DNA of 63,830 bases, counting the filler, from Octopus bimaculoides (lineage: Eukaryota), in NCBI RefSeq assembly GCF_001194135.2. It is 9 parts of 7 records of this genome, joined end to end, with 100 filler letters (N's around TTAATTAATTAA, not from the genome) between each part and the next. Parts side by side here need not be neighbours in the genome. Positions count along the whole stretch, not along the records: positions 14,010 to 44,272 come from NC_068988.1; 8 more parts are not named here. One strand, written 5' to 3'. The notes under the pieces were generated by a model. It was not told where the DNA came from, made no database searches, and saw only the letters and a program-made list of their open reading frames with translations. Below, piece by piece: positions 14,761-20,687 of this stretch. Within the stretch, counting starts at the first letter, position 1. Each line of letters opens with the position of its first letter. A program made the position numbers and the translations under genes.

Positions 14761-14822
14761 TACGAGCGGGTGCTGAAAAATTCCTGATTTTAAGGGTAAT
14801 CGCGAAAAGTCTGGTTGGAAGC
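14761..14822 (+). mobile_element. Mariner-derived MITE, left-end fragment
   Basis: TACGAGCGGGTGCTGAAAAATTCCTGATTTTAAGGGTAATCGCGAAAAGTCTGGTTGGAAGC matches the left end of the 15071-15293 element. Confidence 0.75.
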
Positions 14823-15070
14823 GTCCGGGATAAGGAGAATTGTTCCTAAACTCCCTATTTACAATGTCTATGAATAAAAGGAATAAATGCATATCATAAC
14901 AAATTTGCTATAAGTAAAGAAAGAAAAGATATGAGGGTTAGTAAAATTTGTGAAAAGAAATGTGTGGAATAAAAAACTCATTCACATGGTACGAGTCAAA
15001 TTTTACATGTTTCATTAGTAAATATAACTATATGAAAACCCCAACACGTGCACACATATACACATGCAAG

Positions 15071-15293
15071 TATGAGGTGGATGCTGAAAAGGTCCTGGCT
15101 TTAAGGGTTTCGCGAAAGGCTTGGCTAGAGGCCCAACCTTCTGAGTTCTTTTACGGGGGCTTAGAAAAACTGAAGGGCCGCTGTAATAAGTGTGTGAACC
15201 TGAGAGGGGAATATGTTGAATACGATCATAGTTAACTGATCCTCCTGTATTTTCTTTCACCCAAAGCCAGGAACTTTTCAGCACGCCTTCGTA
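15071..15293 (+). mobile_element. Mariner-derived MITE (~220 bp)
   Basis: TIRs TATGAGGTGGATGCTGAAAAGGTCCTGGCTTT / AAAGCCAGGAACTTTTCAGCACGCCTTCGTA with TA ends; interior encodes a mariner transposase C-terminus KAWLEAQPSEFFYGGLEKLKGRCNKCVNLRGEYVE. Confidence 0.9.
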
Positions 15294-15499
15294 CACTTAC
15301 AGATGCAGTCCGTGGACCGATCGTCAGCATTATATCCTGGGGTGACTTGGTGGTTTCGGACTTAACCATATACACCCGCAACCAGATGAGTGGAACAAGG
15401 TTCCTGAAGCTTAGGCCTGTGTCCAAGCAGCATTCTGCTGACACCCACAGGTCACCTCTTCTCGTGCATAGTCATCTAGACGCTTTCTTAGCGACCTGT

Positions 15500-16560
15500 T
15501 CGTTGTTTTCGATGAGTCTTATTCAACAAGCTTTTTCTCTATTCATGAAGATATTACAGTATTCAACATCTAGTTCCGTCCACCAAGGAAATAAATGACT
15601 AATGAGTTTATTTCCCTTAAGCAACTGCCTCACCGCAAGTGCAAACTTAGAGCGTTGTTCAAGCTGTAACAATAGGGTTCCTTTGTAAAACCATTGTTGT
15701 ACCAACAGATTTGCTCCGACTATAGATGAAACAGCAAGTAATAAGGCGCAAAAAAAGCAGGAACAAAAGTGCCTCTGTTGAAAGCCAGCCTGGCGTAAGT
15801 TTTGACGATGCCATTGGAAGAGAAGGCATACTGTATGTATTAGTAGATATGAATACTTACTTCAACGACCCCTCGATTAAGTGCGGGGTTTCAAACTCTT
15901 CTAATAGTGAAGTCTGCACCATCTGCAGAGAAGTGAGTTTTAGAACTGGATTGTTAGAGAATGTGGCGCAGCGGGGTGCAACTTAATGGTCAGTTTCTGT
16001 ATCTCAAGCAACCAAGAAGCGGCATTCTTTTCATCATGCTGTTGAAATGATGTGAAATAATCAAACTAATCCAACTCTAGTTCAGCATTGGGCTAAACTT
16101 GCTAAAGATTTCAAGCATTATGTGCAACATGAAAATAAGGTATATCGATGAGATATCTACAATGAAGGTACGCAGCTCTCATTGACAAGCTCAAGGATAT
16201 AAATGGTCAAGAATGTCAGAAATATGGTTTCTTTCGTTTTAATCACACTGAAATGAATAATCTAGCTACAGAGATCTTGAAAGACACCGTATAATGTTGA
16301 CAGTGAAACTAAAATTGCGGCAAACAAGGACGCAGACTTTCTGTAATTTTTTGACAGGGTTTGATCACAAGAAACTGTATATGCTTCCTTGATATTTATG
16401 GTGGAATTGCAAAGACATTCCAGATCATTCTATGGCTTCCTAAGTCCTTCAATATTAATGTCACTGTGTTTGTAGTTGTTTCTTTAACTATTATCGCTAC
16501 ACACCTTGAAGGTCGTACAGCACATTTTGCTTTCAAAATCCTGTTGAACTTGGATATGGT
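15500..16560 (+). mobile_element. Helitron RepHel relic (Rep-helicase linker and PIF1 helicase motif I), heavily decayed
   Basis: Fragments across frames: FSIHE..VH; KLRALFKL*Q*GSFVKPLLYQQI; RRKK...PGVSFDDAIGR; VCTICREV...GLLEN; HWAKLAKDFKH...IYNEG; CFLDIYGGIAKTF (Walker A, cf. FLDGPGGTGKTF); IIATHLEGRTAHFAFKILLNL (cf. IAATLL.GGRTAHS.FKLPL). Confidence 0.85.
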
Positions 16561-16624: not shown

Positions 16625-16896
16625 CAGGCGTGGCTGTGTGGTAAGAAGTTTGCTTCCCAACCACATAGTTCGGTATTCAGTCTCACTGCGTAGCACCTTG
16701 GGCAAGTGTCTTCTTTTATCGGCATCGGGTGGATTTGGTAGATGGAAACTGGAGCCCGCCGTATATATATATATATAACGGGCTTCTTTCAGTTTCCGTT
16801 TACCCTATCCACTCACAAGGCTTTATTCGGGCCGAGGCTATAGCGGTAAGACTGAACTGAGAGGCAAACTTTTTATCACACAGCCACGCTTACGCC
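16625..16896. mobile_element. Two internally deleted SINE family A copies in inverted orientation around (TA)n
   Basis: Plus copy 16625-16761 (CAGGCGTGGCTGTGTGGTAAGAAGTTTGC...), minus copy 16778-16896. Confidence 0.85.
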
Positions 16897-18606: not shown

Positions 18607-18836
18607 AGGCAGCGAGATGGCAGAATCGTTAGCACGTCGGGCGAAATGCTTAACGGTATTTCGTCTGTCTTTATGTTCTGAGTTCTAATTCCGCCGAAGT
18701 CGACTTTACCTTTCATCCTTTCGGGGTCGATAAATTAAGTACCAGTTGCGTACTGGAGTCGATGTAACCGACTTAAACCCTTTGTCTGTCCTTTTTTTGT
18801 CTCCTCTATGTTTAGCCCTCTGTGGGCAATAAAGAA

Positions 18837-18840
<4 letters not shown>
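18607..18840 (+). mobile_element. tRNA-derived SINE family B (Meta-domain-like core)
   Basis: GGCAGCGAGATGGCAGAATCGTTAGCACG...GTCGACTTTACCTTTCATCCTTTCGGGGTCGATAAATTAAGTACCAG; the core resembles the MetaSINE domain. Further copies occur near 28545, 38420, 40057, 47632, 47838, 51505 and 60892. Confidence 0.85.
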
Positions 18841-18877
<37 letters not shown>

Positions 18878-19499
18878 AATGCATCTCTCTCTCTATATAT
18901 ATGTGTGTGTGTGTGTATGTATGTGTGTATATGCGTGTACGTATGTTTGTGTCTGTTTATGTGTCTCTCTGGTCGTTTGAATGTATAAACACGAAACAAG
19001 TAATATATGGATGAAGATATTCTTGATTACATCTGTTTGTATGTTTGGCTGTTGATAAGTACAAAGATAATATTCATTCTAGGACATAATATTTAAAATT
19101 TAAAATTCAAATTATATTAAATCGGTAAGACTTCTTCCATTGTAAAAAACAAAAGCTGTGTGTATAATCTGCTTTCTTGAATAATAAAATTTACCTGGTT
19201 ACATCAAATAGATACAACTCACTGATTGCTTTTAGGTTTACTGCGACTGATGTTTAACTAGACGAGATTAACTTACTGGATGTTAACTCGTTGATTATAG
19301 TACTGTAGAGTTTTCTAAGAAACATTACGATCGGATTAAGAATGAACAGAGACATTATTGTTTAGATTCTCGCTGTTGTGCATGCACCTCCGGAATTATT
19401 ATATGTTTGGCAGACATCAGCATGTATCAGCAAATAATTTCTTGAATTCTATAAACAATAGCTTGTAGTCTTGTAAGATTCATCGTTCCGACACGGTAG

Positions 19500-19550
19500 C
19501 TTTGACTGAGAAAGCACAAAACAAGATCGAAACATCGCAGAGTTTTAAAG
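19500..19550 (+). ncRNA. Type I hammerhead motif, copy 1 (degenerate)
   Basis: Stem I CTTTGA/TTAAAG; core CTGAGAA (G8A); stem II eroded (AGC..ATC); GAAAC; stem III AC/GT; triplet GUU. Confidence 0.55.
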
Positions 19551-19820
19551 TCCCCTTACACTGGTGAATCGCGTACTACGAACACATATCGTCTGAAGGG
19601 AGAAAGTGTCCTCAGATGACGTATAACAGCAGCGTTCAGCATATTCACGTTCGAATCTGCCTGAGCATTTTAAGAATGAATAGAAATGTTATTGTTTCTG
19701 CATGCACATCAGGAATTATTACCTGTTTAGTAGACATCAATATGTCTCAACAAATTATATTTTTCATTTCTATAAACAACAGATCGTGTTCTTGTTAGGT
19801 TCACCGCTTCCGCGAGGTAG

Positions 19821-19875
19821 CTTTCACAGAGGAGACACACACACAATAAGGTCGAAACAGTGCCGTGTCTGAAAG
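19821..19875 (+). ncRNA. Type I hammerhead motif, copy 2 (single core substitution)
   Basis: Stem I CTTTCA(19821-26)/TGAAAG(19870-75); core CAGAGGA (U4A); stem II GAC/GTC with 14-nt loop; GAA; stem III ACA/TGT with 6-nt loop; triplet GUC (C17 = 19869). Confidence 0.75.
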
Positions 19876-20146
19876 TCCCCTTACACCGGTAAATCGAGCG
19901 TGTATGGACACACATCATCTATACGGAGGAGGTGTTCTCCGTTGATGAATATCTACAAATATGAGCATATTCATTTTCGTATCTACCAGAACGTATAAAG
20001 AATGAACAGGTACGCTATTGTTTAGACTGTCACTGCTTTGTTTGTTCCTCAAGAATTATCAGTTTGACAGATATCAACATCCACCAGGGAATAATTTGTG
20101 CACTGATTCCTATTAACAAAACTTCGTACATCTGTTAGGTTCATCG

Positions 20147-20452
20147 GTGTGAGTGGGAGCACAGTGACACTGGGGTACAAATATACACAGGCCCAATATA
20201 CCCATCATGATTACCCGACTGACAAAGGGTATGCCAGACACATGTATCACAACTCACAGGTAGAGCCCAATCAGAATTTTCTTCAGGTAGAGTAGCTCCT
20301 CTCACTCAAAAGAATCCTGAATAAGAGTTGCTTAACGACGATGAACGAAACATCCATATTTCAAGAGATGAATTATTGAAACCACAAAGAAGAATTCCTC
20401 TCAAAACATGGCTATGGTGCTCCCCCATTCACCCTCCTCGTGATCAGAGATA
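20147..20452. mobile_element. Dispersed repeat fragment interrupting the tandem array
   Basis: Abrupt loss of array homology and a GC-richer block (…ATACCCATCATGATTACCCGACTGACAAAGGG…CATGGCTATGGTGCTCCCCC…GTGATCAGAGAT) that I recognise as a common octopus interspersed repeat; family not determined. Confidence 0.5.
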
Positions 20453-20647
20453 CATTAATATTATTTAGTATACTGTACTTAGAATTCAATTACCTGAAAT
20501 ATTTAATGGATTCTTACATCTTTAAGGGCAATTTGGCTGTTATGTATTACCAGATCGAACGACCCTGTACTGCTTGGCTTGTACTTCCGATGAATGTACA
20601 ACCAAATATACCTTCAGAAAGACATGCAAGCACTCACACAGACATAG

Positions 20648-20687
<40 letters not shown>

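What the first reader, a model, noticed from the sequence alone, without database searches (positions are those of the whole stretch)
19336..20146. Tandem ~330-bp array in which each unit carries a type I hammerhead: candidate cephalopod non-LTR retrozyme
Seen: about 2.5 diverged head-to-tail units (periods 321 and 340 bp). Both complete units hold a hammerhead at the same position. Copy 2 folds fully: stem I CTTTCA/TGAAAG, stem II GAC/GTC, stem III ACA/TGT, GUC site, and only U4A in the core. Copy 1 keeps CUGA but has G8A and an eroded stem II, while stem I is kept through a G-U change. The lesions differ, so the two-copy consensus (CTGAGGA GAC...GTC GAAACA...GT(C/T)) is a canonical hammerhead. 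Established: non-coding tandem monomers of a few hundred bp with one type I hammerhead each are the architecture of metazoan non-LTR retrozymes, which make self-cleaved circular RNAs (reported in e.g. corals, mussels, amphibians). Inference: this is a fossil copy of an octopus retrozyme family; I cannot tell whether it has been described.
Basis: partly seen in the sequence, partly recalled or inferred. Interest (0 to 1): 0.85.

Follow-up and report, generated by a model that had tools for sequence, protein, structure and literature searches.

The report
Decayed hammerhead-ribozyme tandem repeat (retrozyme fossil)
This is an old, mutated 2.5-unit tandem repeat whose units carry the remains of a type I hammerhead self-cleaving RNA, which is the layout of the known animal "retrozyme" mobile elements; both ribozyme copies look dead, so it is a modest new example of a known kind.

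Summary
A head-to-tail array of about 2.5 units (periods 320-340 bp, 66-75% pairwise identity) lies at 19329-20146.

Unit 2 carries a complete type I hammerhead topology at 19820-19876. Its only core lesion is U4A. In a narrow scan Rfam Hammerhead_1 aligns to it end to end at 23.8 bits, below the gathering score of 34. My own descriptor finds it as the only hit in the 30-kb piece. It found none in 80 Mb of composition-matched random sequence, which gives about 1e-4 expected per piece.

Unit 1 keeps only a wreck at the homologous place, and Rfam does not detect it. Unit 3 ends before the motif.

Array size, 39% GC, lack of coding capacity and one type I hammerhead per monomer fit metazoan non-LTR retrozymes. 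The best reading is a neutral fossil of such an element, with both ribozymes probably inactive.

Three things could not be tested. I could not look for other genomic copies, because no eukaryote genome collection was available and every indirect search failed. I could not test for circular RNA. I could not confirm the cephalopod origin. The claim of a "canonical consensus" from two copies cannot be polarised. I rate this a new member of a known kind, of low to moderate interest.

The parts
19329..20146 (+). Whole tandem array, about 2.45 units, 39% GC, non-coding
   Evidence: Searches give the repeat families, blastn and nhmmer placements. fixes the boundaries. One search gives the GC content and a longest stop-free stretch of 76 aa.
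19329..19662 (+). Unit 1 (334 bp)
   Evidence: Alignment A1; nhmmer 19329-19661
19663..19988 (+). Unit 2 (326 bp)
   Evidence: Alignment A1; nhmmer 19663-19987
19989..20146 (+). Unit 3, partial (158 bp); it ends about 15 nt upstream of where the hammerhead would start
   Evidence: The tail beyond 20146 is no more similar to units 1 and 2 than shuffles are.
19820..19876 (+). Unit 2 type I hammerhead motif. Stem I is 19820-19826 paired with 19870-19876. The core CAGAGGA is 19827-19833, with A19828 in place of U4. Stem II is 19834-19836 paired with 19851-19853, with a 14-nt loop. GAA is 19854-19856. Stem III is 19857-19859 paired with 19866-19868, with a 6-nt loop. The predicted cleavage is 3' of C19869.
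   Evidence: Rfam Hammerhead_1 at 23.8 bits, covering the full model 1-45. It is the only descriptor hit in the piece.
19814..19882 (+). Extended stem I of the unit 2 motif: distal helix GAGG (19814-19817) paired with CCUU (19879-19882), separated from the proximal helix by a 2x2 internal loop (UA / CC)
   Evidence: The helix is present in the minimum-free-energy and centroid folds. GG/CC and both internal-loop strands are identical in unit 1.
19499..19551 (+). Unit 1 hammerhead remnant. Stem I GCUUUGA/UUAAAGU is kept. The core is CUGAGAA, with A19511 in place of G8. Stem II is lost and stem III is reduced to 2 bp. U19544 sits at the cleavage-site position.
   Evidence: Alignment A2 and pair counts. 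Rfam does not detect it, and neither does the descriptor with up to 2 mismatches.
19545..19869 (+). Notional 325-nt monomer RNA between the two cleavage-site positions
   Evidence: Its fold is not more stable than shuffles, z = -0.94.

Best explanation
The array is a neutral, decayed genomic copy of a non-autonomous retroelement of the metazoan non-LTR retrozyme kind.

In the live element a multimeric transcript of ~325-330-nt monomers would be cut once per monomer by a type I hammerhead, here 3' of the GUC at the position of C19869. [quoted passage not shown] A reverse transcriptase supplied in trans, most likely from a Penelope-like element, would copy the circle more than once round. That would give a head-to-tail multimeric cDNA that integrates with arbitrary ends.

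What is shown here: the tandem architecture, the hammerhead topology in unit 2 and its statistical significance, the homologous wreck in unit 1, the low GC and the absence of coding capacity.

What is inferred from published work on the family: self-cleavage in the ancestor, circularisation, mobilisation by Penelope-like elements, and insertion as a multimer.

Both present copies are most likely catalytically dead. Unit 2 has U4A, weak 3-bp helices II and III, and a competing fold. Unit 1 has G8A and no helix II.
For: 1. Rfam's independent type I hammerhead model aligns end to end (model 1-45) to 19821-19875 on the + strand at 23.8 bits. E is 3.4e-4 even after multiplying by 4227 families.
2. 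A structural descriptor finds this site as the only hit in 30 kb on both strands. The descriptor asks for at most 1 core mismatch, stem I of at least 6 bp, stems II and III of at least 3 bp, G10.1-C11.1, A15.1-U16.1 and H17.
3. The same descriptor found none in 80 Mb of composition-matched random sequence. With stem I relaxed to 2 bp there were 19 per 100 Mb. That gives at most about 1.5e-9 per base for 7 bp, or about 1e-4 per piece and 2e-6 per array.
4. The motif lies in a head-to-tail repeat of 320-340 bp with 39% GC, no open frame above 76 aa and no Pfam domain nearby. This matches the published definition: ~150-450-bp tandem monomers, GC below 45-50%, one type I hammerhead each, and no LTR, PBS or PPT (PMC7229834).
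5. Stem I continues past a 2x2 internal loop into a second helix, as in natural type I hammerheads.
6. The array is 2.45 units long, not a whole number. Simple tandem duplication gives whole multiples, whereas a more-than-unit cDNA from a circular template gives arbitrary ends (inference).
7. All three units are about equally diverged at 66-75% identity, as expected if they were inserted together. The Jukes-Cantor distance is about 0.16 per copy to the ancestor. That is close to the Penelope-like-element burst at JC 0.2 reported for Octopus vulgaris (PMC13282606), which matters only if the host is an octopus.
Against: 1. The Rfam score is below the curated gathering threshold (23.8 vs 34). The hit did not appear in the gathering scan or in the 1.5-kb E-value scan.
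2. Neither copy has an intact core. Unit 1 is not detectable as a hammerhead.
3. Helix II has only 3 bp and a 14-nt loop. Helix III has 3 bp and a 6-nt loop. Published canonical metazoan motifs have a 4-bp helix II and a 1-2-bp helix III with a 2-4-nt palindromic loop (PMC4209133).
4. The catalytic fold (-10.2 kcal/mol) loses to an alternative GACAC/GUGUC pairing (-16.7 kcal/mol).
5. The 325-nt monomer is not more structured than shuffles, z = -0.94, whereas live retrozyme circles are described as highly self-paired.
6. Identity between units is not higher in the ribozyme than elsewhere.
7. I found no target-site duplication, no second copy in the 30-kb piece and no reverse-transcriptase remnant among the longer frames.
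8. The family-level test, other genomic copies, could not be run.
Confidence: 0.7

Rival explanations
1. The array is a remnant of the terminal pseudo-LTR region of an autonomous Penelope-like element, or of a tandem Penelope-like insertion that lost its coding part. It would then not be a dedicated small non-autonomous retrozyme.
For: Penelope-like elements carry type I hammerheads in their pseudo-LTRs and insert as partial tandems (PMC4209133; PMC8557442). A 2026 preprint finds that vertebrate retrozymes are sister to pseudo-LTRs (10.64898/2026.07.22.740005), so the two categories shade into each other. Penelope families are reported in Octopus vulgaris.
Against: The units abut directly, with no reading frame between them. 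No RT or GIY-YIG signal appears in the longer frames of the piece. Hammerheads of Penelope-like elements are described as minimal: helix III absent or 1 bp, helix II 6-8 bp, helix I 4-5 bp. Here helix I is 7 bp plus an extension, and helices II and III are 3 bp each.
Confidence: 0.13
2. The array is an ordinary local tandem duplication or minisatellite-like repeat, and a hammerhead-like motif arose in it by chance.
For: The Rfam score is below gathering. Neither copy has an intact core. There is no excess conservation of the motif, no significant fold, no other copy in 30 kb, and external copies could not be found.
Against: The expected number of such motifs is about 1e-4 for the whole piece and about 2e-6 for the array. 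On the same rate only a handful are expected in a genome of a few gigabases. The chance that one of them falls in a ~330-bp AT-rich tandem repeat is very small. The Rfam E-value agrees. The non-integer unit number does not fit plain duplication.
Confidence: 0.1
3. The array is a host-domesticated hammerhead, for example an intronic or regulatory ribozyme, that is still functional.
For: Isolated conserved type I hammerheads exist in vertebrate genes, as noted in PMC7229834.
Against: Core lesions are present in both copies. Divergence looks neutral across the whole unit. The catalytic fold is disfavoured. No gene is evident in the surrounding 30 kb.
Confidence: 0.03

Closest known systems
Metazoan non-LTR retrozymes (Cervera and de la Pena 2020, NAR 48:5054; PMC7229834), e.g. 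those of Mytilus galloprovincialis, Acropora millepora and Ambystoma mexicanum
   Same: Both are head-to-tail monomers of a few hundred bp (here 326-334). Both have low GC (here 39%), no coding capacity, no LTR, PBS or PPT, and one type I hammerhead per monomer on one strand. The array here is a short multimer, within the published range of dimers to large multimers.
   Different: Only 2.45 units are present and both ribozymes are damaged. Helix II is shorter (3 bp) with a large 14-nt loop partly made of an (AC)n run. Helix III is 3 bp with a non-palindromic 6-nt loop. No loop-loop tertiary motif is recognisable. The monomer fold is not unusually stable. Copy number in the genome and RNA expression are unknown.
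Rfam RF00163 Hammerhead_1 (type I hammerhead ribozyme)
   Same: The topology is the same, with an open helix I and closed helices II and III. The order of core elements is the same, with G10.1-C11.1, GAAA, A15.1-U16.1 and a GUC cleavage triplet. The alignment covers the full model.
   Different: The score is 23.8 bits against a gathering score of 34. There is a U4A substitution, and loops 2 and 3 carry long insertions relative to the model.
Minimal hammerheads in pseudo-LTRs of Penelope-like elements (Cervera and de la Pena 2014, PMC4209133; Lunse et al. 2017)
   Same: Both are type I hammerheads linked to retroelement repeats arranged in tandem. Penelope-like elements are the probable source of the reverse transcriptase.
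   Different: The minimal motifs lack helix III, have a 6-8-bp helix II and a 4-5-bp helix I, and flank a ~3-kb RT/GIY-YIG reading frame. None of this is seen here.
Newt satellite 2 and Schistosoma Sm-alpha hammerhead repeats
   Same: These are ~330-bp tandem or SINE-like repeats that each encode a type I hammerhead and are transcribed into monomer-length RNAs (own knowledge, and for the amphibian repeats).
   Different: Those families are high-copy and have intact, experimentally active ribozymes and characteristic loop nucleotides. No sequence similarity to them was tested or seen here.

Membership tests
Type I hammerhead ribozyme (Rfam RF00163) | Three helices around the core, with helix I open and helices II and III closed | tested here: met
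   Unit 2 at 19820-19876 has helix I of 7 bp, helix II of 3 bp and helix III of 3 bp in the right order.
Type I hammerhead ribozyme (Rfam RF00163) | Intact conserved core: C3 U4 G5 A6 N7 G8 A9, G12 A13 A14, A15.1-U16.1, H17 | tested here: not met
   Unit 2 has A at position 4 (19828). Unit 1 has A at position 8 (19511), A at 10.1 and no helix II. All other core positions of unit 2 are canonical.
Type I hammerhead ribozyme (Rfam RF00163) | Score at or above Rfam's gathering threshold (34 bits) | tested here: not met
   Unit 2 scores 23.8 bits. Unit 1 gives no hit. The gathering scan gives no hit.
Type I hammerhead ribozyme (Rfam RF00163) | Match beyond chance expectation | tested here: met
   E is 3.4e-4 over all families in the narrow scan. 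The descriptor gave 0 hits in 80 Mb random and extrapolates to at most 1.5e-9 per base.
Type I hammerhead ribozyme (Rfam RF00163) | Site-specific self-cleavage | not testable with these tools
   This needs in vitro transcription. The thermodynamic model disfavours the catalytic fold by 6.5 kcal/mol.
Metazoan non-LTR retrozyme | Head-to-tail tandem monomers of about 150-450 bp | tested here: met
   Units are 334, 326 and 158 bp, with periods of 320-340. The definition comes from PMC7229834.
Metazoan non-LTR retrozyme | One type I hammerhead in every monomer, same strand, same position | tested here: inconclusive
   Unit 2 is near-complete. Unit 1 has a homologous but eroded motif. Unit 3 ends before the motif.
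Metazoan non-LTR retrozyme | Low GC (below 45-50%), non-coding, no LTR, PBS or PPT | tested here: met
   GC is 39% and the longest stop-free stretch is 76 aa. The nearby frames that were scanned have no Pfam domain.
Metazoan non-LTR retrozyme | Dispersed multicopy family in the host genome | not testable with these tools
   No eukaryote genome collection was available. There are no further copies in the 30-kb piece. Pattern scans of metagenome, viral and prokaryote collections gave only chance seeds. Protein-based look-ups were empty.
Metazoan non-LTR retrozyme | Expressed as monomer-length linear and circular RNA | not testable with these tools
   No transcriptome data were available.
Metazoan non-LTR retrozyme | Monomer RNA predicted to be stable and highly self-paired | tested here: not met
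   The 325-nt monomer has MFE -74.2 kcal/mol and z = -0.94 against shuffles. This is expected to erode in a fossil.
Metazoan non-LTR retrozyme | [quoted passage not shown] 2026) | tested here: not met
   Criterion. Here there is one near-complete motif and one eroded motif.
Metazoan non-LTR retrozyme | Co-occurrence with Penelope-like elements in the same genome | not tested
   No RT or GIY-YIG was seen among the longer frames of the piece. Literature reports Penelope families in Octopus vulgaris, but the host of this window is unverified.
Penelope-like element pseudo-LTR with minimal hammerhead | Minimal hammerhead (no or 1-bp helix III, long helix II), with repeats flanking an RT/GIY-YIG reading frame | tested here: not met
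   Helix III has 3 bp and helix II has 3 bp. The units abut with no reading frame between them.

The most novel reading that the evidence does not exclude
The fossil marks an undescribed retrozyme family of cephalopods. Younger members elsewhere in the genome would still self-cleave and give abundant ~325-nt circular RNAs. Their hammerhead would be a variant with an enlarged loop 2 and a 3-bp helix III with a hexaloop, so it would be active as a monomer, unlike the dimer-dependent amphibian motifs. No paper in the searchable library links hammerheads or retrozymes to cephalopods.
Probability: 0.3. Interest if true: 0.45.

Novelty: new member of a known kind. Interest (0 to 1): 0.3.

Why it matters
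If the family is confirmed genome-wide, it would add cephalopods to the animal groups that carry hammerhead retrozymes. Molluscs are so far represented by a mussel. It would provide a consensus for testing a slightly unusual type I hammerhead, and a handle for looking for small ribozyme-derived circular RNAs in cephalopod tissues. It would also allow dating of retrozyme activity against the Penelope-like-element bursts reported in octopus.

On its own, this locus is a dead, neutral relic of an element class already known to be widespread in invertebrates. It changes no current view.

Tried and rejected
1. I looked for other copies through spurious reading frames.
   - The search for homologous proteins with the 63-aa minus-strand frame over the ribozyme found no candidates.
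   - An exact look-up of that frame found nothing on record.
   - A full HMMER search of 1.84 billion representatives with the 76-aa frame gave one hit, P0001 (E 4.7e-10, 12 stretches). P0001 is a protein of 58-aa repeats and shows no BLASTP alignment to the query. I rejected it as an artefact of summing weak repeated matches.
2. I ran DNA pattern scans with the most conserved block, AAAGTCCCCTTACAC(NGGT). They returned 2 metagenome loci, 14 viral loci and 3 prokaryote loci. For the 16 metagenome and viral loci, blastn showed no extension beyond the seed. The 3 prokaryote loci all come from bacterial MAG contigs and were not checked by blastn. All were treated as chance.
3. I tried to identify the host from a mariner-like frame and found no candidates. 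A literature search for SINE sequence strings found nothing.
4. I built a family-specific covariance model (R1) from the two motifs and scanned the piece with filters off. The one marginal hit, at 16222-16292 (14.4 bits), is only a CUUUC/GAAAG hairpin without any hammerhead core. I rejected it.
5. I tested whether unit 3 continues into the hammerhead, which would have given a third state for position 4. Its tail is no better than shuffles, so there is no outgroup.
6. I tested thermodynamic support. The folds of both motif regions and of the monomer are no more stable than shuffles.
7. I looked for a target-site duplication. Only a shared 5-mer (ATCGG) occurs at the two junctions, which is not meaningful.
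8. I looked for other ribozyme classes and for features on the opposite strand. There are no Rfam hits.

Full report
**The array**

The region holds a diverged head-to-tail repeat. The repeat finder reports three-copy families with start-to-start spacings of 320/337 and 321/340 bp, and two-copy blocks of 57-121 nt at 70-81% identity. blastn of the units against the 30-kb piece gives unit 1 vs unit 2 at 73% over 294 nt (E 2e-42) and unit 1 vs unit 3 at 70% over 161 nt (E 3e-15). It finds nothing else in the piece. A profile of the three units places them at 19329-19661, 19663-19987 and 19989-20166, and again finds nothing else.

Local alignment against shuffled controls shows that homology begins at about 19329 and ends at 20146. 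The array is therefore 818 bp, or 2.45 units. Tandem Repeats Finder does not report it because the copies are too diverged. Pairwise identities in the shared part are 75%, 72% and 66%. All three units are about equally old, with a Jukes-Cantor distance of roughly 0.33 between units 1 and 2, or about 0.16 per copy. GC is 39%. The longest stop-free stretch in any frame is 76 aa.

**The hammerhead in unit 2**

The sequence at 19820-19876 reads as follows:
- stem I 5' strand: GCUUUCA
- core: CAGAGGA
- stem II: GAC, a 14-nt loop, GUC
- GAA
- stem III: ACA, loop GUGCCG, UGU
- C19869, the cleavage-site nucleotide
- stem I 3' strand: UGAAAGU

This is the type I topology, with helix I open.

Rfam gave no hit at gathering thresholds over the piece, and none in a 1.5-kb E-value scan. 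In an 86-nt scan, where the filters are laxer, Hammerhead_1 (RF00163) aligns over its whole length (model 1-45) to 19821-19875 on the + strand. The score is 23.8 bits and E is 3.4e-4 after correction for all 4227 families. That is below the curated 34 bits. The losses come from U4A and from long insertions in loops 2 and 3.

I wrote a descriptor to estimate the chance rate. It asks for at most one core mismatch, helix I of at least 6 bp, helices II and III of at least 3 bp, G10.1-C11.1, A15.1-U16.1 and H17.
- On the real piece it finds this site only, on both strands, even when relaxed to two mismatches and shorter stems.
- In 80 Mb of first-order Markov sequence with the piece's composition it found nothing.
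- With helix I relaxed to 2 bp it found 19 per 100 Mb.
- That extrapolates to at most about 1.5e-9 per base for a 7-bp helix I.

This means about 1e-4 expected for the piece, about 2e-6 for the array, and only a handful for a genome of a few gigabases. The motif is not a chance match.

Helix I also continues past a 2x2 internal loop (UA / CC) into a GAGG/CCUU helix, in both the minimum-energy and the centroid folds. This is the usual shape of natural type I hammerheads.

**Unit 1 and unit 3**

At the homologous place (19499-19551) unit 1 keeps helix I. One pair has changed on both sides, C-G to G-U. It keeps CUGA, GAAA and the first two pairs of helix III. It has A for G8, A at 10.1, no helix II, and GUU at the cleavage site.

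Rfam does not detect unit 1 even in a narrow scan, and neither does the relaxed descriptor. "Both units hold a hammerhead" is therefore true by homology only.

Unit 3 stops about 15 nt before the motif, so there is no third state to polarise differences. The single double-sided change is not statistically informative: 263 of 500 shuffles do as well. Identity between units is no higher in the ribozyme than elsewhere, as expected for neutral decay.

**Is it active now?**

Probably not. From established hammerhead biochemistry (Ruffner, Stormo and Uhlenbeck 1990; my own knowledge), substitutions of U4 or G8 reduce cleavage by orders of magnitude.

In unit 2 the catalytic fold evaluates at -10.2 kcal/mol. 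An alternative fold pairs GACAC, which is partly an (AC)n run in loop 2, with GUGUC, which is the 3' strand of helix III plus the cleavage-site C. It reaches -16.7 kcal/mol. Neither the motif regions nor the 325-nt notional monomer (19545-19869) fold better than shuffles.

**What it is**

The published definition of metazoan non-LTR retrozymes (PMC7229834; PMC7761336) is:
- tandem monomers of ~150-450 bp, from dimers to large multimers
- GC below 45-50%
- one type I hammerhead per monomer
- no LTR, PBS or PPT, and no coding capacity
- expression as linear and circular monomer RNAs
- probable mobilisation by Penelope-like elements

The features I could test are met, or met in eroded form. Copy number, expression and the autonomous partner could not be tested.

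The non-integer number of units argues mildly for insertion of a more-than-unit cDNA rather than plain duplication (inference).

The motif differs from the "canonical" metazoan description, which has a 4-bp helix II and a 1-2-bp helix III with a small palindromic loop. It also differs from the minimal motifs of Penelope-like pseudo-LTRs, which have no helix III and a 6-8-bp helix II (PMC4209133). Mussel retrozyme hammerheads also lack most of the archetypal loop nucleotides.

No reverse-transcriptase or endonuclease domain was found among the ten longer non-microsatellite frames of the piece, and the units abut directly. A truncated autonomous Penelope-like element is therefore less likely. 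A 2026 preprint argues that retrozymes derive from pseudo-LTRs anyway.

**Searches for relatives**

The available DNA collections hold no cephalopod genomes.
- Pattern scans with the best conserved block returned only chance seeds in metagenome and viral contigs, and three bacterial MAG contigs in the prokaryote collection, which I also take as chance.
- Protein-level tricks with spurious frames gave nothing.
- One further hit was an artefact of summing weak repeated matches.
- A covariance model built from the two motifs found no further motif in the piece.

**Host**

I could not verify the cephalopod origin. The piece is a gap-rich, microsatellite-rich draft scaffold. It holds dispersed SINE-like repeats that I recall as the abundant octopus SINE. 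That is memory only. A literature string search found nothing, and a protein search with a mariner remnant found nothing.

If the host is an octopus, the per-copy distance of about 0.16 is close to the Penelope-like-element expansion at JC 0.2 reported for Octopus vulgaris, which also has recently active Penelope families (PMC13282606).

**Literature and novelty**

No paper in the searchable library connects hammerheads or retrozymes with cephalopods. The class is described as widely but patchily distributed among metazoan phyla, molluscs included.

**Verdict**

It is only partly supported, because the family-level, expression and host claims are untested and both ribozymes are damaged. I rate it a new member of a known kind, with interest about 0.3.

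Noticed in passing
18622-18777, 28539-28629, 40071-40227, 40270-40417: There are four copies (63-92% identity) of a ~190-nt SINE-like dispersed repeat (AGAATCGTTAGCACGCCGGGCGAAATGCT...GTTCAAATTCCGCCGAGGTCGAC...GGGTCGATAAATTAAGTACCAGTTGCGTACTGG). I recall it as the abundant octopus SINE, but that is from memory only. ARAGORN finds no tRNA, and a literature string search found nothing.
   Followed up: partly
16641-16724, 30974-31057, 32658-32741, 43935-44018: A second dispersed repeat family of ~84 nt (GTAAGAAGTTTGCTTCC.AACCACATGGTTCTGGGTTCAGTCCC...) is present in four copies at 70-86% identity. It is probably another SINE.
   Followed up: no
14769-15295: This is a mariner-derived fossil. Inverted terminal repeats (GTGCTGAAAAGTTCCTGGCTTT) lie at about 15080 (+) and 15295 (-), around a remnant of the transposase C-terminus (frame 14960-15235...FFYGGLEKLKGRCNKCVNLRGEYVE). 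A further partial terminal-repeat copy lies at about 14769. There is no Pfam hit and the protein search found no homologue.
   Followed up: partly
14010-44272: The piece is a draft scaffold with 11 internal N gaps of 10-931 bp, most of them bordered by microsatellites. Repeat and ORF finders give many artefacts across the gaps.
   Followed up: yes
18837-18962 and 20631-20676: The array and about 400 bp of unique flank on each side sit between a (TA/TG/TATG)n tract upstream and a (CA)n tract downstream. The two tracts are complementary in composition (inverted-repeat pairs I1-I8). Penelope-like elements are reported to prefer microsatellite targets, but the tracts are not adjacent to the array ends, so this is probably a coincidence in a microsatellite-rich region.
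   Followed up: no
19837-19845: Loop 2 of the unit 2 hammerhead contains an (AC)4-like run and is 4 nt longer than in unit 1. This is probably secondary slippage. The run creates the competing GACAC/GUGUC pairing that outcompetes the catalytic fold.
   Followed up: yes
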